A stretch of 64,000 nt of DNA from Utricularia gibba (GCA_002189035.1 NEEC01000014.1:2728001-2792000), one strand, 5' to 3'; numbered from the stretch's first letter, positions 700 through 52,900 are shown. Notes: generated by a model not told the origin, from the letters alone. A program made the numbers and translations.

Positions 700-1460
700 A
701 GTCTTTGCCATAGCATCCTCCCGGATTCTTAGAATGCTATCTGTCCTATCTACTCCAACCCGGTTTAAAGTATGGTCCAAGTTCAAAAAGCTTTCTTCAA
801 CACATTTTCCCTGATTCATAAAAGTAGTAACCCAAAGTTGTGAGTGTCGACATATTATTAAAATTATAAATTAATATAATTAATTTAGTGGTCCCACACG
901 TGTGTGTTTGATGTCCTCCTGAAACCCTCATGTAGAGCATTACATTGTAATAAATAATTCTGATTCCGAATTTCCCTAATAAAATTCGGGGGTGTATATA
1001 AATATTGTCATCTTTCGGGCGAAAATATTGACCCCCTTCACTTCAAAATTTTTTGATGGAGTGTGTGAGATAAAAGGAGAGAATCACCCAATAAAATGTG
1101 GGTGTGGTGAGAGGCTGCTGATCCCATCATTTTCTGTGCTGTAAATAGCACTTCTTTTGTCTTTTTCTTTTCCTTGGGTTAGAAAATTGAGTCGGGGTAC
1201 TTTTGGAATTACATTCGAAAGGCACCAGCCATCCTCCCCTTGTGATGGGTGAAAAATGAAAAGGCGTGAAATGGGGGGATGATGAGTTGTCAGTGGCATT
1301 TCGGTTATTATCTTCACTTTCATGCCGCTTTTGTAACTCCCCCTCTCAGTAATCACTGACTCACGAGTGGGCCGCACTAACTCACTCTTCCTTCTTTTAT
1401 ATCCTCCTCCATCTCCTCCCCCCAATTCCTCCTTTGAGATCCCATCCACTCAGCCTCGGA

Positions 1461-3854
1461 ATGGGTTTGGGTTTCCATAGCATCGCTTCTTTTGCTTTCC
1501 TTTTCTTTTTCGCCGCGGCCGCCGATGAGGCGGCGGCGGTCGCTTCTTCAAAGAAACCGTATATTGTTCACATGAAGCGCCATTTGAAGCCGTCGGAGTA
1601 CTCCACTTACGCCGAATGGTACTCCGACCATTTGCTGTCTATCTCTTCCGCTTCCCAGGATTCACTCCTCTACACTTACGACGCTGCCTACAGTGGCTTC
1701 GCTGCCGCGATGTCGCCGGAGGAGGCGGAATCGCTCCGCAGCTCAGATTTAGTGGTTGGGGTGTACGAGGACAGGGTTTATTCTCTCCATACTACCAGGA
1801 CTCCGCAGTTTCTGGGTCTTGATCTGGAGATCGGTGCTTTGGCTGGAATCAACGTTCAGGGTCTGAATCAAGCTTCTGCGGATGTTATCGTCGGTGTTCT
1901 GGACACTGGGGTTTGGCCTGAGTCTAAGTCGTTTAATGATGCCAACATGCCGGATGTGCCTGCGAGGTGGCGGGGCGGTTGTCAGGCGACTGCAGATTTC
2001 AATCCTAAGATCCACTGTAACAAGAAGCTAATCGGCGCTCGTTTCTTCTCCAAGGGGTACCAAGTGTTTTCTAGTTCTGGATCCACCGAATCTCCTTCCC
2101 CACGGGATACCGACGGCCATGGAACTCACACATCCAGCACCGCCGCCGGTTCTCCGGTCTCAAACGCCAGTTTGTTAGGTTACGCCAGTGGGAATGCGAG
2201 AGGAATGGCGCCCCACGCGCGAGTGGCGACTTACAGAGTTTGCTGGAAGTCTGGTTGTCTTGGATCCGATATACTTGCTGCTATGGACCGTGCGATACTC
2301 GACGGTGTCGATGTGTTGTCTTTGTCACTAGGCGGCGGTTCTGCGCCGTACGCGCACGACACAATTGCTATTGGAGCTTTCGCGGCGATGGAGAGAGGGA
2401 TATTCGTTTCCTGTTCCGCCGGAAATAGTGGCCCGGGAAAATCGTCGATTGCGAACGTGGCCCCGTGGATAGCGACGGTGGGTGCGGGTACACTCGACAG
2501 GGATTTCCCCGCTTTCGCTACCCTTGGGAACGGTCAAAAATTCACCGGAGTTTCGTTATACTCCGGAAAACCATTGGCGCCGAACAAATTGGTTGAATTA
2601 GTCTATGAACCAGGGAAAAATAGTTCTAGCAATTTGTGTTTAGCAGGTTCTCTGGATCCCGCAATTGCCCGGGGAAAGTGGTGCTCTGCGACAGAGGAAT
2701 TAACCCCAGAGTGGAGAAGGGAGCAGTAGTGAGAGATGCCGGTGGCGTGGGGATGATTCTGGTTAACACAGCTGCTAACGGAGAAGAGCTAGTTGCAGAT
2801 AGTCACTTGATTCCGGCGGTGGCCTTCGGGAGGAAAACCGGCGACATTATACGGAAATACGTTACAAGTACGAAGAACCCATCAGCGACATTGACCTTCG
2901 GCGGCACGGTGGTGAATGTGAAGCCGTCACCGGTTGTGGCGGCATTCAGTTCACGGGGTCCGAATACAGTGACTCCACAAATATTGAAGCCCGATCTGAT
3001 TGGCCCAGGAGTCAACATCCTCGCCGCATGGTCCCTCGCCGTTGGACCCACCGGTCTTGAGAAAGACAACCGCAGATCTCCGTTTAACATCATCTCCGGT
3101 AAGAGATATCGAATCTGTCCCCACATAGCAACGGCTATAAATTCTGTGACTCTGAAGCTTCGTCAATGGGGGATTCTGTTACAGGGACATCAATGTCATG
3201 CCCGCACATAAGTGGATTAGCTGCGTTGCTGAAAGCAGCGCACCCAAAATGGAGCCCGAGCGCGATCAAGTCGGCGTTGATGACCACCGCCTACACCGTC
3301 GACAATTCCAAATCACCGCTCCGGGACGCCTCCGATTTCTCGATCTCAACTCCGTACGCCCACGGTGCCGGCTACGTAGACCCCCACCGTGCAATTTCCC
3401 CAGGGCTGGTCTACGACGCCTCCCCGGGGATTACATTGCATTCCTCTGCTCGCTCGGGTACACGGACGAAATGCTGCACGTAATCGTGAAGAGGCCTAAT
3501 GTAACATGTGAACGAAGTCGGAAATTCCGCGATCCCGGCCAACTAAACTACCCTTCCTTCTCTGTGGTATTTGGGAAGAGTAGGGTGGTGAGGTATACCC
3601 GTGAGTTGACGAGCGTGGAGCCGGCAGGATCGGTTTATCGGGTTCTGGTGAAGACACCAGAGGGGGTGGTGGCGACGGTGAAACCGGAGCTGCTCGAGTT
3701 CAAGAAGGTCGGCGATAAGAGGACGTTTACGGTGACCTTCATTTCAGGAAGGGGGGCGAAGCCGGCAGCAGGCGGTGCCTTCGGATCCATCGTTTGGAAG
3801 AATGCAGATCATGAAGTGAAAAGCCCGGTGGCCTTCTCTTGGGCGGCTGCCTGA
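1461..3854 (+). CDS. SBT1.8: Subtilisin-like serine protease, SBT1.8-like (about 769 aa after repairing two -1 frameshifts); exons 1461-3098 and 3185-3854
   Basis: Signal peptide, I9 prodomain ([12 protein letters not shown]), catalytic DTG, HGTHT and G|TSMSCPH motifs, PA domain, and C-terminal [10 protein letters not shown]. Single-base losses in homopolymers at about 2671-2677 and 3426-3429. An 86-bp GT-AG intron lies at 3099-3184. Confidence 0.9.
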
Positions 3855-41321: not shown

Positions 41322-44300
41322 GGAAATTTGTTGACTTGGTAGCTGGGTCAAAGTCTTCGTTTATTTACGGAGTCTGAGTTTTCTTATTTTGTGGGGTGTT
41401 CGTTGCATTAGTTCTCCTCGTGGCTTGTTTTTCGGTTGGTTGTGAGTAATTGCTTTTTAGTTAAACGCAATTTGTTAATAGGTTTATATATAAGCTTGAT
41501 TTTCAGTTGATAGGGCATTGAATTCGGATGTCTAATTTTGCTTTGGTTTAACAATTGGTATCGGAGCCATGACAACATGAAGCAACCAGAATTCATTCAT
41601 TCAACGCTTTGAAAGTTAACTGCAATTACTGGGTAATGATGATAGAGAATTTGCTTTGCTCAAAGAAATATTGGGACATAATTGAGATTTGAATCCATCG
41701 TACGTAGAGAGCCGCTACTCCCCATCACAATTGAAAGCTCAAGGATTCGAGTGTCAAGAATTACGAAATACAACCCATTCATTGTTGCTACACGAAGAGC
41801 ATCTTGGGCAAATCTAGTGCTTGATTTGGGAGGGGATGGCAAAAAAGCTTGTAGCTAACACCCTTCTCAGTGTTCAGTGATCACATCTTCAACTTACATT
41901 GGGAATTTGGAATGTTGGAGATGCAAGGAGGAAATTGGTTGTCATCACTATCAGAGAAGTAAAACTACGTTTTGTGCTGAATTGAAGAATCCGATGATGT
42001 GAAGAACATAACCATTGATGAGCCTTAAGGATCAATACTAGTGCATGAAAAAAAGGTCTAATACACTAGAGTGTGAAAAATGAGCCATTACTATTAAAGC
42101 AAAGCAAATGAGAACCACGATTGAGGAAATGAGGATTTTTCATGGAAGAGATGGAAGTCATAGAAGAAGAGAATGTGGAGAAAGGGGTCTCACAAAGAAA
42201 CAATCAGCGCTATAGGTACCACAAATTAGGACATTACGGAAGTGAATGTCCTAACTATAAGGACGACCATAACGAGAAGGAAAATGATGACAAGGTACTT
42301 CTAATGGTATATGATGATGAAACATAACAAGATATCCTTCATGGCATTTCCACTCATCAACAACAATGAATCTAGATCGGATTCATAAACAGATCAATCA
42401 CATAAACAGAAATGAGAGTTATTAAAAAATAATCATAGTATATGGGTAAGACTTTAACAAACAGAAGTAAAGAATATTTATTCAATGTTTTTCATAAATC
42501 ATAGAGGGAGGCTCCTTGCTACCCCTAGAACTACACTACAAAATGTAGTCACATAACGTAAAAACATAACTACTTGAAAATGATAAGAACAATGCTTGTG
42601 GGCAGAAGGTGCTAGATAAAACACTTTTTTTTCATAATAGATCATTAACTATTTGAGTATTTGGTTAACTAAAGTCATGTCTATATTCATGAGGTAAATC
42701 AAAAGGTTAAGTTGAGTAATAAGAGCTTTCATCATGAAGGCACCAATTGAGCTTGAGCAAGAAAATACACAACCATGTGTTGCAAGAGAAAAACTTAATG
42801 CACAAACTTAAAGAGAAATTATTCTCTTATTTCCTCATAGCAATAGTAGTACATAGAAGTGTTTATACAAGCATGCTAAACATTAAGTATTATCCAAACA
42901 AAAGTACTAAATAACTACCTAAAACTACACTCTCTTATCTTATTACAAGTTCTTCAAATGTAGCTATGTTGGATGGCCTTTGTTGTGGGTTCCAACACTC
43001 CCCCACAAACCTAAGCCATCCCTTAATCCAAGCATTCCTTGTAGCACAGTGAACATCCCTCGAGATAGAGGTTTTGTGAAGATGTCTACATGTTAATCTT
43101 GTATTTTCACATACTCCAATGTTACCACATTCCCAATAATAAAGTCTCTAATGTAGTTGTATTTTGCTGCTATGTGCTTGTTTTTTCCATGGAAGATTGG
43201 ATTTTTACTCAACTCTATGATAGAATTATTATCAATCATGATTCTTGTAGGAGCAGATTGTGCACATCCAAAATCACTCAAAAGATTTATGAGTCAAACA
43301 GCTTGGCATACGCAATGATTTGCAACAACAGATTCAGCCTCACACATGGATAAGGCAATCATCAGCTACTTCTTAGAACAAGCAGTATTTCCAATAAAAA
43401 ATGCAAACCCTGAGATGCTCTTAAAATCATCTAGATTGCCACCCCAATCACTATCACTATACTTGCATAACTCGAAAGTTTCTGATTTTTGAAACCAAAG
43501 TCCAAAGTTCAATTTTCCTTTAACATAACATAGAATTCTTTTAGCAATAGTAAGATGAAGCAAGGTTGGACTCTTCATGAGGTGATTGACCAAGCCTATT
43601 GCATAGAGAATGTCAGGTCTAGCACTTGTGAGATATCTTAAACTCGCAACCAAGCTTATAAAAAGTGTAAGATCTACACTTCCACTTGAATCATTCAAAT
43701 GTAGTTTTGAGCTAATAGCCACTGGTTGGTCTATTGGCTTATGTAAATATTAAGGAAGAATAGAGATGAAGAAAGGTTGAGGGCAATGAGAGTTGGAGAT
43801 CTCTGTAGATTCAATTTCCTTACTCATTCATGTACTTTTCTATTTTCTCTACTTATATAAGTTATTAGTTCTTTATACACTATACATGACCTACATGAGC
43901 CCAATCGATTATTGCGTTCTTCTTTAAGTAATGGTCTTGTGTGATTCTGTTGCTTCTTCACACCCTCCTCAAACGAGACATTTGCGAATATAGTAAGTCC
44001 AAGTTTGTCTCATAAGAAGAAAAATGCTTGTGTTTGCAATGACTATGTAAATATATTTACAACCTACGAACCTGTAGCTATATGCATTAGAGATATAAAA
44101 CCGAAAAAATAGTGATCTCTCACCACATGGCAGTCTATATCAAGATGTTTGGTACGTTCATGAAAGAGGCATTATGAGTAATGTGCAATGAGTACCTATT
44201 AGTCTAGAAGAGAATGGCTAGAGAAATGAGCACCTGCATGTCCTTCATAAGATATGTAATCCACAACAAATCTAGAGTGATTGTTCCCATGGCCTAGTAC

Positions 44301-44817
44301 TCTACCTCATCTGAAGAACGAGACACAATTGTCTATTTTTTCGCTCTTCAATTGATCAAATTATTTCTCAAAAATATGCAAAATTCTGTGACTGAACAAT
44401 GAGTTTCAAGATACATTCCCTAATCTGCATCACAGAATGCCTACAGTTGTGTAGTTCTTGAACACATATAATGCAATCCATGATCTTCAATGTGCTTCAA
44501 ATATCTCAATAGTCTGTTTACTACAGTCTAATGATTAATAGTTGGCTGTTTCATAAACTGACTCAATTGTTGCATATAGAAGGTGATATCTAGTCATGTA
44601 AACCCAAATATAGCAACCATCCAAACACTTTACGATACCCTTCCAAGTCGTGCAATGGATTCTCATTGTCCAATGGAAATCGTAAGCCCTTGAACATTGG
44701 TGTGGCTATCTCTCTAAACAGATTTCTTTCCAAGTTGGACAGCAAAGTTTTGATATACTTCAAATCAGATCCTTATGTTGTTTCTTTTTTGTTGGATCTA
44801 ATTTTTTATAGAAGAAG

Positions 44818-46930
44818 ATGATAATGGCTCCCTGCATCCCCTGTAGCGCACAAGGACGATGTTGTGCTCCCAATTGCGTGGCACGCCCCTTCTTTGAACC
44901 GGACACAGGGAAGACTTCCGCCTCACTGATGAAGTGTTTGGATACACTTATCTGGTGAAGTGCATCGAGGCAGCCCTTGATGACTATAAAGCAGCAGCTA
45001 TGGAGGATCTAGTTATCATGGCTTATGATCATGTCGCCATTGTATTACCTTATCGTTATGAGGGATCATTGAGGAGGGGAATGGATGGCTCGTCGCTGCA
45101 AAGCCGATGGTTCTCTCTTCAGACTTCCAATTCTTGCCCATTGAGTTGGTCGAGAAAGTTTTCACCTTATTGCCTGCAACCGAAGTTTTATGAGATTGGT
45201 AAAGGTTCAAGGACATTCTGGGATTCATGGCAGTTCTATGGTAATGTTTCATTGGATAGAGAGTTTGTCACAGGGATAGGTGATGATGCCTTGAGGACAA
45301 GGATTGTTGGGGACATTATCATGATGCATTCCAGTATTGGGGCTGTTAGTGTATGTGTTCTAGAGACAATCAACTCATTGGCAAATCTTATCTTATGATA
45401 TTTACTTTGAATTGTGATCAAATTTATATCATTGATAAAATCCTCTACTTGATCTATATGCTATAGAAATTATGATGAGATCATAATGTGAGATTCTTCA
45501 AGCACTCATGATCAAGTTAAAAACTCCCTAGCTAGAGTATTTGTGAAATGAGGATATCACAAATACGGATAAGCTGACACACATTGAGTTCCCTAAATTA
45601 TTTAGGCAATGGTTCTCATAATTGATGTAATGAGATTACTAGAACCTATGTGTGGGTGTCGATTAGAGAATTGATTCACTGGATGACTCATCTTCGAGAT
45701 ACTACTATGGGAAGCTAACCAAGTGTCAGTAGCAAGATCTCGAATATGATAGCCGTGGAAGTAAGCTTAGACTTGAGGTCAACAAAGTTATCTTGATCTT
45801 AAGCTCACATTTTCGCTCATTACTAATGGGAGCCTAACCATGGCTTGCCTAGTATGGATGAGTAGGGATGTGACTCCTTAAGGTTGGAGATAGTTGATTG
45901 ATCAATAAAGGATTCATCACTCATGTTAGCGATGAGATCATATCTCAAGTAATTGCATCAAAGCCTAAAAGTAAGTCCTGGGCTCAGGGTAATGACACTC
46001 GAATTGTTTGAGTAGGTCATTGAGTGTTAGTGCTTGAATGCAATTATAAGTTCGATACATCAGAAAGACACACACCCATGTTTTAGTATCGAATGAGATA
46101 TAAGTATGATGAAAGCTGTTCATTGCATGGTGGCTGGTCATGGAAAGGCTCAATCAGTTCACCTGATTATTCTTACATCTTGGGAATCATGATATGTTGC
46201 TAGACATCACTCATGATCGATAATGATGGATTTGATTAATTAAGAGTTAATTAATAAATCCATTATTATGGCCTTGATTGAAGAAGCCTATAGGGTCACA
46301 CACAATAGTGGAGTCACTCAACGATATAAAATAGAATGACACAATTACATGAGATGTAATTGGTAAAGTGGATAAATTAAATTGAGAGTTATTTTGAGAT
46401 TAATATTGATTAAACTCAAAATAAAAGATCATATATAGATAAGATTTGGAACATATATATATTTCCACAAGATAAGATCTTTACGGAGATATGATTTGAT
46501 ATGTTACCAAATATCTATCAAAAAGATTTAAATCTTGAGATCTGCTCCATGGGTCTTCGTGATCTCAGAGACTAATCCACAAGGAGGCGTTTTTCTCTAC
46601 TAGCACCTGAGGAATTCGACCAGCATTCAAGAGCCTTGAGAAGGTTATCGACGGAGTGCTCCACGTGTGGATACCATAGAGGCCGTCTCCTATTGACGGT
46701 TGGTGAACAACGGAGTCATTTGAAAGGTATTTTAGCATCCCTTAGTCTGATGTATACCGTATTCCAAGATCTGCGTTGGGGTTTCTCAAAATTTTTAAAA
46801 TTCCGCTGCTTTGGAGACATACGGTGTCTACGAGAAACCCAACAGGAGCTCGATGTTTTTTCTTTGTATTTCAATGCCATGACAGATTACCAAAAGTAGC
46901 TTGTGAATAAATGGGTGAGGAGAGTGGATA
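44818..46930 (+). pseudogene. Chimeric LOB-domain plus F-box (F-box/LRR/FBD-like) pseudogene inside element C, split by a solo LTR
   Basis: CIPCSAQGRCCAPNC (C-x2-C-x6-C-x3-C) is followed by VARPFFEPDTG[-1]EDFRLTDEVFG...K...A. LPIELVEKVFTLLP (45134-45175) lies in a shifted frame, then GSRTFWDSW...IVGDIIMMH, and after the LTR LDVFSLYF...LVNKWV. Several frameshifts and a stop are present. Confidence 0.75.
45344..46844 (+). mobile_element. Solo LTR, probably Copia Angela-type, 1501 bp
   Basis: TGTTAG...CCCAACA, with AAATTCCGCTGC near the 3' end as recalled for Angela LTRs. TSD GGGGC/GGAGC (4 of 5). Confidence 0.75.
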
Positions 46931-49900
46931 TAAAAACTCGAAATAAGGAAACAAGCTCTTGTTTATTTTCTAGAAGGAAAGTTCATATGGATCGTGAATA
47001 ATCATCCATGATGGTTAGAAAAAATGTAGTTCCAGTGATTTTTGGGGTTTTGTATATGCATCTGAAGGTTGCGTGTTCATTCCACTCTCACCCACCATAT
47101 AAAGATTAAGGAAGAATAGAGATAAAGAAAGGTTGAGGGCAATGAGAGTAGGGAATCTGTGTGGATCCAATTTTCTTCCTCATCTATTTACTTTTATGTT
47201 TTCTCTACTTATACAATTTTTCATTTCTTTGTACACTATACATGACCTACATAGGCCCAATCAATTATTGTGTTCTTCTTCAACTAATGATCTTGTGTTG
47301 TTCTGCTGCTTCTTCAGCTTACAGTGTTCTAAGCCAAACCACTTTAAAGTATCATCAGCGAACATGCTTTGGAAAATGGAGATACTTTCTTTATTCTTGC
47401 TGACATGAATTGCGAGGTAGTGACTCATCAAACTGAGATCACTCCTTTCAAACTCTTTATTCATAGCGTGCTTGAAAGTCTCAAAAGAGAAACACTTTCA
47501 GTGAATACTGGACCATCCACATACAAACATAGTAGTAGGATTCCGCTATACTCATTAATTCTAAATACAAGCTGTGCTCATAAGAACATCTCTTGAAATG
47601 ATTTTTAACAAGATAATGGTGAATTTGCATATGCCAAGCATGTGGTGTTCAAGAAACCCATTCAAAAATGCAGATTTTACATCTATTTGATGGATTTTCC
47701 ACTAATGTTGAGTTGGCACTGATATAATTAACCTAATAGTTTGCATTCAAGCAATTAGAGTGAACATTTCACCAAAATCTAGGCCTTCCTTCTACTTATA
47801 TCCTTTAACAACTAATCTAGCCTTGTATTTTTCTATTTTACCAATAACATATCTTTTGATTCTATATACTCATTTGACTCTAATAACATCTTTGTTTATT
47901 GATTTGTCGGCCAACTCCCAAGTTTCATTCCTCCTAATAGCATTCATCTCATCTTCCATTGCTTTTCTCCATTTTGAATTATGGACAGCTTCTTCAAAGC
48001 TCAGATTTTCAGATTCCACAAATAAGCAATAATGAGAGAAATGCACATGTTTTGTAGCCTTTGCATACGATAATCTGCTTGACTTTTCAGCAGCCTTAAT
48101 CATTAAGATCGCTTGGCTGTCTTCTAACATAACCAGTTTGCACCACATTAGATGCAATAGGTTGGTGTAGAGGCTCTAACTATTGTTGCTACTGCACGTC
48201 TGGTTCTGGTGGTTGCTGGAATTCAAGGGATTTAATGAATCTGCTATAATATCATCAAAAACATGTAAGCTTCATTATCATTTGGGGAGGTTTCCCAATT
48301 CTAACTTGCAAATTCATCAAACTCAACATTCCTGGTAATCACAACTTTATTATCCAAATGATTGAAAAGTGTGTAGCCCTTTGAATTGAGGTCATAATCA
48401 ATGAAGACAAATTTCCTACAATGATTATCCAGCTTTGATCTTGTTTGTTTAAGTATATGTGCATATGCTACACCCAAACACTTGTGAGTAACTTTTGGTA
48501 AAATTACTCTAAGCTTGTTAAGAAGTAGCTCAAGCAATATTTTTACTAAAGCTTCTATTTAGCAAATAAACCATATAGTGAGCTGCTTCTGCCCAAAATT
48601 GTTTAGGCATGTTCTTGGTGCTATGTATACAACAAATCAAATTTAGAATTACTCCATTTTTCTGAGGTGTGTGAACAACTTTTATAGGTCTTCATAATCC
48701 AATTTCATCACAGAAAGCCTAAAAGTCTTGGAAAGAAAATTCTCCACCTCTATCTGAATGAAAAGCTTTAATTAGAATACTACTTTATCACTCAACCAAG
48801 GTCTGAAATTTCTTGAATGCATCAAAAACTTCTGATTTCCTTGTTAGAAAATAAATCCAATATTTTCAAGAATAATTATCAACAAGTAGTAAAAATAATT
48901 GTGATTTCCTTTAGAAGTTGGAATAATTGGACCATAAACATCTTCATGAACTAGTTCAAAAAGATTCCATGCTATGAATGTGGACACTTTAGGAATAATT
49001 TCTTAGTTTGCTTTCTGAATACGCAGCCTTCCACAGCCATGTTGGTTGAGAAATTGTTGGCAATCCAATAACCAAATCATTCCTGCTCATGAAACTAAGG
49101 TTGTCAAAATTAATATGAGCATATCAGAAATGTCAAAGCCAAAATGGACTGGAATATACCATCTTCATGCATTTATAAGTATCAGAATCAAGAGTCAAGA
49201 CAAACATTCTATTGGAGTACATCGAAACATTAACAAGAGGTCTATGGTTGTCATCCTTGATGGTTAGATTTCCACCAACCAATTGAATATTACACCCCTA
49301 CTCCAAGAATTCTCCCAAACGTAGTATGTTTAATTGTAGGAATGCTACATATAAAATATTTTGAAGAAGCAAGATAGAATCAATTTGTAATGAAGTAAGA
49401 ACTGACCCTCGACCAGTAATTGTTACTTTGGATGAGTCACCAAAGGAGATGGCCCCACTATAAGGCTCATCCAACTCTTAAAATAAGGATTTATTTCAAG
49501 TCATATGATTACTTGCTCTTGAATTAATGTACTACCTATTTGCCTTCTCGTCTCTAAAGAAAATAGTAAGATTGGATTTTCCACTTCTATTTTTTCTTCA
49601 ACCATGAAGCTTTGGAAGTTCGAAGCTTTTGCACCAGACTCGCATTCTCAAGAGTAATGATCAAGCTTATGAATTGTGTAACACTCAACTTGAGATTTAT
49701 CCTTCTTGTGATCGCTTGACTTCCAATATGTCGATTTCCCTCTCCCTCTTCCATGGTGTGATGAAGTAGAGGGTTTATCATTTTCAGATGAGGATTTATC
49801 AATTTGATGTTCATAATATCTACCTCGACCATGACCTTGTAATCCTACTCTTCCTAGTCCTCTAGGGTATGATTACTTAAAATATTTCATCCCCTCAACC

Positions 49901-52900
49901 TTATGTGCAATGGCTTGTGCTTGAAACACAACATCTGATGGCTCTTCTCTCCATTTCAAGCGATCCCCATGTGCTTGCAATGAACTATACAACTCTTCAA
50001 TTGTTAGATCACTAACTTTATTAGCCTCTTTTATGACTACAACAATATGATCAAATTTTGGCTACAAGGATCTTAGAATCTTCTCAAATATTCTTTCATT
50101 ACTAAGTTTATCCCCAAGCCGATTCATTTGATTAGTGATAGCTTGTACTCGAACACAAAAGTCCGTGATTGATTTTCAGCGCTTCTATTTTATAGCTTCA
50201 GAATCCCCATGTAGTATCTGCAATCGCAGCTTTTTCACACAATCAACCCCTTGAAATGAATTTTTCAAGGCATCTTATGACTGTTTAGAAGTTGTCGCTG
50301 CTGCATTTCGAAAAAGATATCATCCAAGGTTTGATATAGAAGAGACAATGCCTTCTTGCTCCTCCATTGTACTGCCGCATTAGATCCTAAGGCTTCGATG
50401 GTGATAGCATCCAAACACTCATAGGCACCCAATAAAGCCCCTATGCGTACACCAATTTTCATAGTTGTCCTTTGTAAGGATAGGAACTGATAGATTGCCA
50501 TCATTAGACATCTTTGTAAACCAAGAATCGAGTAGCTTTGATACCACTTTGTTGCAAGAAAAAACTTTGATGCACAAATTAGAAGAAAATTTGTTCTCTT
50601 ATTTCCTCATAGCAATAGTAGTACATAGGAGTGTTTATATAGCTACGCTATACAATAAGTATTATCCAAATAAAACTGCTAAACAACTAACTAAAACTAC
50701 ACTCCCTTATCCTATTATAGGTTCTTCAGATGCAGCTACGTTGGATGGCACATCAAATGAAGGATCAATCTTGTGACACATATTTTTTATGGTGTTTTAA
50801 TTCACATAATTAGGATTATTTAATATAAAATTTGAAGTTCTTGAGTATAAATTCTAATATTTTACAATTCTAATAGTATTATTAATTTTGTCTATTAGAG
50901 TGGATTAAATCATTGATTTAATCTACTTTGCCCTTGCAATAATATTTGTATTCAAGTTTGGTAGCAATTTTTATTTAGATCAATTTTCACTAGCATTCAT
51001 TTGAATTCCAAACAGAGGGAGTGAGCTTTAAGAGAAAAATAGAAGAAAGGTAGAGGATTCTTGTATTGTTAATGGTATAAAGATTTCAGAGGATAAACTT
51101 CTAATAAAGGTAAGCTATTATTGTAATTTTGATTTTGCACAAAAAGAGGAAGTAGATAGAAGAAATAAAATCATCAATCCTAAAGAGAGGACAAAGCAAT
51201 GATGATCCCTCAAAGTACTATTTTGATATTCAATCATGAGTTGCGTGGAGTACAATTTGAAATTTAACATCATCTTATTCATGACCTAGTCAAAAACGAA
51301 ATCATTAAGTCAGAGCATTTTCTTTGTATCCTCAATTTCTACAAAAATTTTCAATTATATACATTTTTTCTATTTTAGAGACTGTTTGGATATGACGCTT
51401 TGTAAAATCTTGTTGATATATCAAACTTGATCTTAGCTTAAAGGTTTGTAAGTTGATGTAAGAGCCATAAAAAATTACGTTATGTTAAATGACACATGCT
51501 AATCACATGTTTGTTATTTAAAAATTAATTCATAGTAAAGAAACTTATCTATTAGGTGAATATACTGAATCCTATGATTGTAAAATGCAATATTATCCTT
51601 ATTTTTCAAAAAAAAATTATTCTAATCATCAATTTTGGATATTTTAATAATATTGTATATAAGTCTAATTTTTCTATCAAAAATATGATAATGAATTTTT
51701 ATTAAATAAAAATTTCAACAAAACATATTGATACTTTCAAATCATTTATTTTTATATAAATTAATTTAATTCATATTCAATATCAAATAAATTAAAACAT
51801 CCTACTAAATGAACTCTAAGTTGGTATGTAGTTTTTTTTTCTTATGAAGTTTCAGGCTTAAATTAAGGAGCTAGTCAATGTATGTTTTCAATTTTTTTTT
51901 TAAAGTCTTTACTCATGATGGCTAGAATTTTTTTGAAGATAGAGAATATATTCTTTAACTTGAGGCAAAATCTCAATATTTTTATTTATGTTTATTTATA
52001 GATATTGCTAGTTGGGGCTAGTTTTTTGGACAATATTTGATAACTACCAAGTTAAATGTGGTTGAATGCTACTGTCCTACATGGTTAGCACCTTGATTTA
52101 ATCATTGCTTCATGTTTATAATTTTCAAAATTATTTTATATATAATTAAGGAGAATTGTGAAGCAATTGGACCATGAGACAAATAATATATTTGTTGGGT
52201 TATGGAATTAATTTGTAAATGAATCTATTTGTTGTTTTCTTTTAATATATAAATAGAATATGCTAAAATAAAGAGGACTTGAGAGTGGATAAAAAAAAGA
52301 CAAGTAGTAGGAGCTTACACTACATACGTAGATTCTTTTGTGAGTTTGATTGTGTATTGTTAGTTATCGGTGATTCATGAAGTTTTCTCCTCTTTGATCA
52401 CATTTTTACTATCATGGTCTGGAGTTGATCACATTCATATTTAATATTGGCATTGGAATTTAGATTTCTCCTATTCTTGATACAAGATCACGGGGATTCA
52501 TCGATCTAGTAATGAATTAGAGTTTCACTTGATTTTTGTATTTTGGATGTCCATAAACTCAACTGATTTTTTTTTTTTACAAACTATGTAGATTGTTCCT
52601 GGATTGACTATTGACTTACAATTGTGTTCTTTTTTTCTAGTTTTTCAAATATGATTCAGGAATATACCACAATTTAGTTGTCTTAAAAAAACAATCAAAA
52701 TATAACAATTGTGAAAGAAAAACACCGGAAAAAGCCCATGATGTTACAAATGGAACAACACTTGGAAGCTCACAAAATTTTTAGAAAATGAAAAATAAAT
52801 AAAAGAAAATGGAGAGAACTTGAAAAGTATAAAACAATATTAGTTGTTAAAAATTTTACACAATAATAAGGCATCAACTCTACTAAGATATTTGCTCAGT

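What the first reader, a model, noticed from the sequence alone, without database searches (positions are those of the whole stretch)
44818..46930. LOB-domain plus F-box chimeric gene carried antisense inside a non-autonomous Copia element
Seen: ATG 44824 opens APCIPCSAQGRCCAPNCVARPFFEPDTG, which has exact C-x2-C-x6-C-x3-C spacing. After one missing G at 44908-44910 it continues EDFRLTDEVFGYTYLVKCIEAALDDYKAAAMEDLVIMA. This aligns without gaps to the class I LBD consensus (FAPYFPPD...F..VHKVFG.SN..K......R.DA..SL.YEA). About 100 nt past this LOB-like block comes an F-box (LPIELVEKVFTLLP...GSRTFWDSW), then IVGDIIMMH. Beyond the solo LTR it reads LDVFSLYF...LVNKWV, the pattern that follows the F-box in F-box/LRR/FBD proteins. 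The segment shows no introns and replaces the gag-to-RT portion of element C in antisense. Established: LBDs are transcription factors and F-box proteins are SCF substrate adaptors; I know of no described fusion of the two. Inference: either a lineage-specific LOB-F-box family (a DNA-binding or LBD-dimerising ubiquitin-ligase adaptor) was captured as a retrocopy, or the retroelement created the fusion by template switching. This copy is decayed.
Basis: partly seen in the sequence, partly recalled or inferred. Interest (0 to 1): 0.85.

Follow-up and report, generated by a model that had tools for sequence, protein, structure and literature searches.

The report
Dead LOB gene fragment inside retrotransposon
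A broken, old Copia-type jumping element in this plant carries, back to front, the front end of a very unusual LOB-type transcription-factor gene and probably the front end of an F-box gene. It looks like ordinary dead cargo of a known kind, and nothing shows that a LOB-F-box gene family exists.

Summary
Element C has 219-nt LTRs (43742-43960 and 47098-47316) and a perfect GCTTA target duplication. It keeps only the RNase H side of its Copia pol, on the minus strand. A 1501-nt solo LTR (45344-46844) splits the plus-strand coding remnant.

The LOB call holds. Read with X at the one frame break, 44824-45030 scores 39.1 bits (E 1.2e-9) on Pfam LOB, profile positions 1-65 of 99. It also matches the Ramosa2 LOB structure (E 1.4e-4).

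The F-box call is only probable. The N-half signature is rare by simulation, but Pfam gives 12 bits (E 0.2), which is noise level. No joined reading, and none of the PDB, Atlas or large protein searches, found an F-box or any relative.

The LOB part and the F-box-like part lie in different frames, and the F-box-like part has its own ATG. Two stitched gene front ends therefore fit better than one fused gene. No RNA contig was found, and another accession holds only 1-3 diverged copies.

Verdict: an ordinary captured gene fragment in an LTR retroelement. The fusion-family idea is unsupported.

The parts
43737..43741 (.). Target-site duplication GCTTA of element C (left copy). The right copy is at 47317-47321.
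   Evidence: identical 5 nt directly outside both LTRs
43742..43960 (-). 3' LTR of element C (219 nt, TG...CA)
   Evidence: 85.4% identical to 47098-47316, K2P 0.165
43961..44772 (-). Purine-rich tract next to the LTR, then the decayed Copia pol remnant (end of RT and RNase H side)
   Evidence: tblastx of 44590-44363 and 44168-43995 matches the outer Copia pol at 43614-43387 and 43197-43024 (31-33% aa); reading of the minus strand.
44773..44817 (+). AT-rich 45 nt between the end of pol homology and the ATG. Possibly the 5' UTR of the captured LBD-like transcript.
   Evidence: G+C 0.22. The origin is inferred.
44818..45030 (+). LOB-domain remnant: start codons, CX2CX6CX3C zinc finger and the following block, covering Pfam LOB positions 1-65 of 99. 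One frame break in the G run 44908-44910.
   Evidence: G+C 0.50
45031..45106 (+). Unassigned G+C-rich linker, open in frame 3, with no family match
45107..45343 (+). F-box-like stretch. ATG at 45107, with LP at residues 10-11 of that reading. N-half in frame 2, remainder in frame 3, with the break in the T run 45186-45189.
   Evidence: Pfam F-box E 0.2, N-half only; signature 0 in 100 simulations; no further support; in X5 this T run is one shorter
45344..46844 (.). Solo LTR of a highly repeated family (TG...CA), flanked by GGGGC (45339-45343) and GGAGC (46845-46849)
   Evidence: depth hundreds of times that of the flanks; loose ends at 45343/45344 and 46844 in three runs; one X5 contig skips it.
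46850..46930 (+). Its origin is uncertain.
   Evidence: no family; G+C 0.36, like the element
46931..47097 (-). Leader and primer-binding-site side of element C
   Evidence: position next to the 5' LTR. The primer-binding site was not matched to a tRNA.
47098..47316 (-). 5' LTR of element C
42772..50749 (-). Outer Copia element into whose pol element C inserted. LTR parts at 42772-42977 and 50543-50749.
   Evidence: RVT_2 and the retroviral SH3-like domain on the minus strand; K2P 0.172

Best explanation
This is a dead passenger sequence in a dead retroelement.

A Ty1/copia-type LTR element (element C) lies on the minus strand. It has lost gag through most of RT. In their place it carries about 0.57-0.8 kb of G+C-richer, intron-free, host-derived coding DNA in the opposite orientation.

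The first 210 nt of the insert are the 5' end of a very divergent class-I-like LBD gene: about 45 nt of leader, the start codon, the zinc finger and the first two thirds of the LOB domain.

After a 76-nt unassigned linker comes what is probably the 5' end of an F-box gene. It has its own ATG, with LP at residues 10-11 of that reading, and it lies in a different frame.

I read the insert as two gene front ends placed side by side when the chimeric element was made, not as one LOB-F-box gene.

Inferred mechanism: reverse transcriptase copied co-packaged cellular mRNAs and jumped at each mRNA's 5' end. This would explain why both pieces run up to a start codon, why both face the same way, and why they lie antisense to the element. 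Repair or recombination at the DNA level is the alternative.

Shown by nesting: the chimeric element inserted into the pol of an older Copia (target duplication GCTTA), and a third element later inserted into the passenger and collapsed to a solo LTR. Inferred: the element has since decayed neutrally (LTR K about 0.17).

The fragment encodes nothing functional now.
For: - LOB identity: with 6 and 19 for the N-terminal piece alone.
- Element anatomy: LTRs, perfect 5-bp target duplication; minus-strand pol remnant homologous to the outer Copia pol; outer Copia domains.
- Foreign origin: G+C is 0.50/0.50/0.43 across 44818-45343, against 0.33-0.36 in the LTRs, the pol remnant and the solo LTR.
- F-box-like part: Pfam F-box is the only hit of that piece. 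The strict LPxE..L[PSDN] signature is found once in the window, at 45134, and 0 times in 100 simulated 64-kb windows. The ATG at 45107 lies in the same frame.
- Different frames for the two parts.
- Few lesions: one frame break in each part and no stop in the relevant frames. The LOB part is nonetheless only about a third identical to Ramosa2. This implies that the source was an open, already divergent gene when it was captured.
- A second, diverged copy exists without the solo LTR.
- Literature: gene fragments inside LTR retrotransposons are well documented. Maize has 425 such elements from at least 189 captures (PMC2774510). Bs1 carries pieces of three genes, and template switching is described (PMC13317346).
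Against: - The F-box rests on 18 residues. Pfam gives 12.1 bits, below the gathering score and no better than the chance hits to Peptidase_M1, Glyco_transf_92, ApoA-II and CycT2-like seen.
- Joined readings lose even that hit.
- Nothing downstream matches LRR or FBD models.
- No parent or relative was found for either part, so 'two parents' is inferred and not shown.
- Frame 3 is open for 166 codons across both parts. A single LBD-like ORF would explain this more simply.
- Both frame-joining differences in X5 lie in homopolymer runs, where indels are common. X5 also has a stop (C to T at 46851) at the second junction.
- The jump-at-5'-end mechanism is conjecture.
- It is unknown whether the insert was present when the element transposed.
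Confidence: 0.5

Rival explanations
1. LBD-only fragment. The whole of 44818-45343 is the 5' part of one very divergent LBD-like gene, read in frame 3 after the single break at 44908-44910: the LOB domain followed by that gene's own variable C-terminal region. On this reading the F-box look in frame 2 is a coincidence.
For: - Frame 3 is open from 44898 to 45395, 166 codons in DNA of about 45% G+C. Only one lesion is then needed.
- No F-box, LRR or FBD support from the joined readings, the PDB, the Atlas or the protein searches.
- The F-box hit at E 0.2 is at noise level.
Against: - The canonical F-box N-half signature is rare: 0 in 100 simulated windows. The Pfam P value for that one model is about 1e-5 per piece.
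- It has an in-frame ATG at the usual distance upstream.
- It is followed in register by S-R-x-F-W...W.
- In X5 the T run at the frame 2 to frame 3 junction is one shorter.
- Frame 3 of this stretch matches nothing either.
Confidence: 0.25
2. A lineage-specific gene family encodes a LOB-type zinc finger N-terminal to an F-box, that is, an SCF adaptor that binds DNA or LBD partners. One of its mRNAs was retrocopied into the element.
For: - Both parts are on one strand, about 100 nt apart, intron-free, in one G+C-rich block.
- The LOB part is too divergent yet too open to be a decayed canonical LBD, so an unusual source gene did exist.
Against: - No protein in 1.84 billion representatives matches at E 0.001 or better. 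The word-index searches found none either.
- The two parts are in different frames and need an extra, unseen frameshift.
- The LOB domain stops at profile position 65 of 99, without the dimerising coiled coil.
- The F-box-like part carries its own ATG, with LP at residues 10-11, like a native N-terminus.
- No RNA contig was found.
- Of the ten listed papers from a search for 'LBD gene family', 'F-box domain' and PF03195, none held 'F-box domain'.
Confidence: 0.1
3. DNA-level origin. The genic block entered an already integrated, internally deleted element as filler DNA during break repair, or as a nested fragment of a Pack-MULE or Helitron-type carrier that had already assembled pieces of two genes. 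Reverse transcription played no part.
For: - The antisense orientation is not what a switch to an mRNA during minus-strand synthesis gives (established retroviral replication scheme).
- DNA transposons carrying gene fragments were noted elsewhere in this genome. In maize they capture far more often than LTR elements do (PMC2774510).
Against: - No terminal inverted repeats of note flank the block.
- Both pieces start at or near start codons and lack obvious introns, which fits RNA templates better.
- The X5 contigs cover both the element's own parts and the block. This is compatible with the chimera having been copied as a unit.
Confidence: 0.15

Closest known systems
Bs1 of maize and other LTR retrotransposons with transduced host gene fragments (maize, rice, sorghum surveys)
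   Same: It is an internally deleted LTR element whose own genes are replaced by intron-free pieces of cellular genes, possibly from more than one gene (PMC13317346, PMC2774510).
   Different: - Here the cargo is antisense to the element.
- It is decayed, and no transcript is seen.
- At most a few copies exist.
- Parents are unknown.
- Capture of two genes is only inferred.
Class I LBD proteins (Pfam LOB PF03195; Ramosa2 structure 5ly0)
   Same: - CX2CX6CX3C finger.
- P-x-F-x-P after the finger, and the spacing up to the conserved FG.
- Pfam score above the gathering score.
   Different: - The basic residues between the second and third cysteines of the Ramosa2 finger (K-F-L-R-R-K) are mostly absent here (S-A-Q-G-R-C; alignment).
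- About a third identity only.
- The domain ends at profile position 65 of 99, with no coiled coil.
- Frame-broken and not expressed as far as seen.
Plant F-box proteins with the F-box at the extreme N-terminus (F-box/LRR/FBD type; Pfam F-box PF00646)
   Same: - Met, with LP at residues 10-11.
- The LPxELxxx(V/I)xxxLP signature.
- An S-(K/R)-x-aromatic-W stretch in register. The consensus is recalled from memory and the motif was tested.
   Different: - Below the Pfam gathering score.
- The second half and the downstream region match no model.
- No homologue was found.
Pack-MULE and other Pack-type DNA transposons
   Same: They carry non-functional pieces of one or several host genes. Such elements were noted elsewhere in this genome.
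   Different: - The carrier here has LTRs, a 5-bp target duplication and a Copia pol remnant.
- There are no terminal inverted repeats.
- The cargo appears intron-free.

Membership tests
LOB domain (PF03195, LBD proteins) | CX2CX6CX3C zinc-finger motif at the start of the domain | tested here: met
   C-IP-C-SAQGRC-C-APN-C. Aligned to Ramosa2 residues 10-35.
LOB domain (PF03195, LBD proteins) | Pfam profile score at or above the gathering score | tested here: met
   39.1 bits against 24.2, E 1.2e-9, with X at the frame break. The N-terminal piece alone gives 17.4 bits.
LOB domain (PF03195, LBD proteins) | Complete domain, including the DPVYG part of the GAS block and the leucine-zipper-like coiled coil of class I | tested here: not met
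   the alignment stops at profile position 65 of 99. No frame gives a match to the rest.
LOB domain (PF03195, LBD proteins) | Intact, expressed gene | tested here: not met
   Frame break at 44908-44910. No RNA contig holds it, which is weak evidence.
F-box (PF00646) | Pfam profile score at or above the gathering score (20.5) | tested here: not met
   12.1 bits, E 0.2, profile positions 4-21 only; no hit for the joined readings.
F-box (PF00646) | N-terminal LPxE(L/I)...(I/V/L)...L(P/S/D) signature | tested here: met
   one match in the window (45134) and 0 in 100 simulated windows. The pattern was chosen after seeing the sequence.
F-box (PF00646) | Third helix with the conserved V-S-(K/R)-x-W core, and Skp1 binding | tested here: inconclusive
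   G-S-R-T-F-W is present after the frame break but adds nothing to the profile score. Skp1 binding is not testable here.
F-box/LRR/FBD proteins | LRR or FBD domain after the F-box | tested here: not met
   no LRR or FBD family at E up to 10. The fragment may simply end before these domains.
Ty1/copia LTR retrotransposon, non-autonomous, with captured host sequence | Two LTRs with TG...CA ends and a 5-bp target-site duplication | tested here: met
   219-nt LTRs, 85.4% identical, with GCTTA on both sides. The first dinucleotide of the right copy is TA.
Ty1/copia LTR retrotransposon, non-autonomous, with captured host sequence | Copia-type pol sequence in the internal region | tested here: met
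   tblastx to the outer Copia pol, which itself carries RVT_2 and the retroviral SH3-like domain.
Ty1/copia LTR retrotransposon, non-autonomous, with captured host sequence | Primer-binding site and polypurine tract | tested here: inconclusive
   A purine-rich GAGGAGGG tract abuts the 3' LTR on the minus strand. The site next to the 5' LTR was not matched to any tRNA.
Ty1/copia LTR retrotransposon, non-autonomous, with captured host sequence | The same insert in other copies at other sites (transposed after capture) | tested here: inconclusive
   X5 has 1-3 diverged contigs over both the element and the insert, but their flanks are not seen. There is no second copy in the window.

The most novel reading that the evidence does not exclude
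A lineage-specific plant gene encoded a divergent LOB-type zinc finger fused N-terminally to an F-box. Such a protein would be an SCF adaptor aimed at DNA or at LBD partners. This element preserves a retrocopy of it, and intact members may survive unannotated in this genome.
Probability: 0.08. Interest if true: 0.65.

Novelty: new member of a known kind. Interest (0 to 1): 0.2.

Why it matters
As it stands, this is one more example of host gene fragments riding in an LTR retrotransposon, a phenomenon documented by the hundred in grasses. Two points are of modest interest:
- The source of the LOB part was an open but highly atypical LBD-like gene with no detectable relative in public protein sets.
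- The cargo is antisense, and both pieces end at start codons. This hints at reverse-transcriptase jumps at mRNA 5' ends.

Only if an intact LOB-F-box gene were found would it matter for plant ubiquitin or transcription biology.

Tried and rejected
Searches that found no relatives:
- phmmer of the 166-aa frame-3 piece against 1.84 billion representatives: no hit at E 0.001 or better.
- Word-index search of the same piece: 48 candidates, none at E 10 or better.
- Word-index search of the X-joined F-box-like reading: no candidate.
- ESM Atlas on three pieces: nothing related. The hits for the LOB C-part were unrelated peptidase clusters with low recognition.
- PDB search with the F-box-like reading: only chance matches at E about 0.5.

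Pfam scans that gave nothing useful:
- Frame-3 readings, the tail and minus-strand ORFs of the block: nothing, or noise.

Searches within the window:
- No second copy of the block.
- No terminal inverted repeats of a DNA transposon around it.
- No Rfam family or tRNA anywhere in the window.

Ideas considered and dropped:
- An 81-nt or 68-nt intron between the two parts (GT at 45042 or 45055, AG at 45121-45122). The first keeps frame 3. The second would join the frames but is short and 50% G+C, so I did not adopt it.
- The 18-nt inverted match between 46911-46928 and the primer-binding-site region. It is no better than eight other chance pairs.

Correction: I first misread the X5 joint as a single C deletion. 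It is a C-to-T change plus a T run one shorter.

Full report
**What is in the sequence.** From ATG 44818/44824, frame 1 reads a C-x2-C-x6-C-x3-C motif followed by P-F-F-E-P-D. At the G run 44908-44910 the sensible reading passes to frame 3. About 100 nt further, frame 2 reads M-V-L-S-S-D-F-Q-F-L-P-I-E-L-V-E-K-V-F-T-L-L-P. At the T run 45186-45189 the reading passes to frame 3 again (G-S-R-T-F-W-D-S-W ... I-V-G-D-I-I-M-M-H).

**Anatomy of the surroundings.**
- An outer Copia lies on the minus strand. Its LTR parts are at 42772-42977 and 50543-50749, with K2P 0.172. RVT_2 and the retroviral SH3-like domain lie on its minus strand.
- Element C is inserted in its pol, exactly where RT homology breaks. 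Its LTRs are 43742-43960 and 47098-47316: 219 nt each, 85.4% identical, K2P 0.165, with a perfect 5-bp duplication GCTTA on both sides.
- Element C is also minus-stranded. A purine-rich tract abuts 43961. Regions 44590-44363 and 44168-43995 match the outer Copia's RNase H side by tblastx.
- Pol homology ends near 44772, only about 45 nt from the ATG of the plus-strand block.
- The 1501-nt insert 45344-46844 has TG...CA ends and GGGGC/GGAGC flanks. It belongs to a family hundreds of times deeper than the flanks in three DNA runs, and other copies' flanks diverge exactly at 45343/45344 and 46844. It is a solo LTR.

**The LOB part is real.**
- The 29-aa N-terminal piece alone gives Pfam LOB E 0.0065 (17.4 bits) and the Ramosa2 LOB structure as the best PDB hit. 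Across a whole 64-kb window that would not be significant.
- Read through with X at the break, the score rises to 39.1 bits, E 1.2e-9, above the gathering score of 24.2. It covers profile positions 1-65 of 99.
- Ramosa2 aligns over residues 10-69 with E 1.4e-4, with its only gap at the X.
- The domain is atypical. Most of the basic residues that Ramosa2 has between the second and third cysteines are absent, identity to Ramosa2 is about a third, and nothing matches profile positions 66-99 in any frame.
- There is only one frame break and no stop. The source was therefore an open, already divergent LBD-like gene, not a canonical LBD that decayed here.

**The F-box part is probable, not shown.**

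Evidence for:
- Pfam F-box is the only hit of the frame-2 piece (E 0.2, 12.1 bits, profile positions 4-21).
- The canonical N-half signature occurs once in the window and never in 100 simulated windows.
- An in-frame ATG lies upstream, with LP at residues 10-11 of that reading, as in plant F-box proteins whose F-box is N-terminal (recalled knowledge).
- The block 44818-45343 is compositionally foreign: G+C is 0.43-0.50, against 0.33-0.36 in the element's own parts.

Evidence against:
- 12 bits is the level of the plainly spurious hits seen in the same scans (Peptidase_M1, Glyco_transf_92, ApoA-II, CycT2-like).
- Joined readings give no hit.
- Nothing downstream matches LRR or FBD models.
- The PDB, the Atlas and three large protein searches find nothing.
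- Frame 3 is open for 166 codons across the whole block. A single LBD-like ORF with an unknown C-terminal region is therefore a serious rival.

I put the F-box derivation at roughly 60-65%.

**One gene or two?**
- The LOB part ends in frame 3. The F-box-like part starts in frame 2 with its own ATG.
- The LOB domain is cut at two thirds of its length.
- A fused gene would need a further, unseen frameshift. It would also lack the LOB dimerisation region.
- No LOB-F-box protein turned up in 1.84 billion representatives or in the listed papers.
- Two juxtaposed 5' fragments are the more economical reading, as in Bs1, which carries pieces of three genes (PMC13317346).
- In the maize survey, no other LTR element held pieces of more than one gene (PMC2774510). 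Double capture is therefore rare, which keeps the rivals alive.

**Other copies and expression.**
- Four small DNA runs of one study hold the exact sequence. Other runs of the same species label hold none of its 31-mers.
- Laid at 80% likeness, run X5 covers both element C's own parts and the block with only 1-3 diverged contigs per place.
- One X5 contig skips the solo LTR.
- In X5 the T runs at 45186-45189 and 46856-46861 are each one shorter. That copy also has C to T at 46851, which makes a stop, and one X5 contig lacks 11 nt at 45281.
- Run X6, which looks bisulfite-converted, holds both solo-LTR junctions.
- No contig of the one presumed RNA run that was laid on the stretch (X9) matched it, and the index found none of its sampled words in any of the seven presumed RNA runs. 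This is weak evidence of silence.

**Mechanism.**
- Shown: the order of insertion, by nesting. The outer Copia came first, then element C inserted into its pol, then a third element inserted into the block. The similar ages of the outer Copia and element C (K about 0.17) are measured.
- Inferred: recombination reduced the third element to a solo LTR.
- Shown: loss of gag through RT.
- Inferred: both pieces run up to start codons, share one orientation, appear intron-free and are antisense to the element. This fits reverse transcriptase copying cellular mRNAs toward their 5' ends and jumping at each end while making the element's sense strand. A switch during ordinary minus-strand synthesis would give sense cargo. 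Repair-mediated insertion at the DNA level is not excluded.

**Verdict.** This is a well-preserved but ordinary case of a host gene fragment inside an LTR retrotransposon. The LOB identification is correct. The F-box identification is plausible. The LOB-F-box gene family is unsupported.

The parents could not be sought, because no tool here searches this plant's genome. I made no repaired or consensus sequence, and I used X at each break in every read-through.

Noticed in passing
window 45110-45122: A polypyrimidine tract ending in CAG (gttctctcttcag) lies directly before the F-box-like motif and looks like a 3' splice site. With GT at 45055 it would define a 68-nt intron joining the LOB frame to the F-box-like frame. 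However, the stretch is 50% G+C and short, so I did not adopt this reading.
   Followed up: partly
window 46911-46928 and 47081-47098: An 18-nt inverted match (78%) joins the plus-strand 'KWVRRVD' codons to the primer-binding-site side of element C. It is of the same quality as eight other chance pairs in the region.
   Followed up: partly
window 45344-46849, run X5: One contig of another accession of the same species label joins 45344 to 46857 without the solo LTR. The solo LTR is therefore either polymorphic or specific to one of several copies of this locus.
   Followed up: partly
window 43700-47350, run X6: This run shows a large excess of C>T (328) and G>A (222) differences, as bisulfite-converted DNA would. 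It could give the methylation state of the element and its cargo.
   Followed up: no
window 1434-3854: A subtilisin-like protease reading is split over three overlapping plus-strand ORFs (431, 191 and 218 aa). This suggests frameshifts, that is, a pseudogene or assembly errors.
   Followed up: no
window 44898-45395: The 166-codon open frame 3 runs 17 codons into the solo LTR, so its present end is an accident of that insertion.
   Followed up: yes
window 42772-42977 / 50543-50749 and 43742-43960 / 47098-47316: The outer Copia and the nested element C have almost the same LTR divergence (K2P 0.172 and 0.165). The nesting therefore happened soon after the outer insertion.
   Followed up: yes
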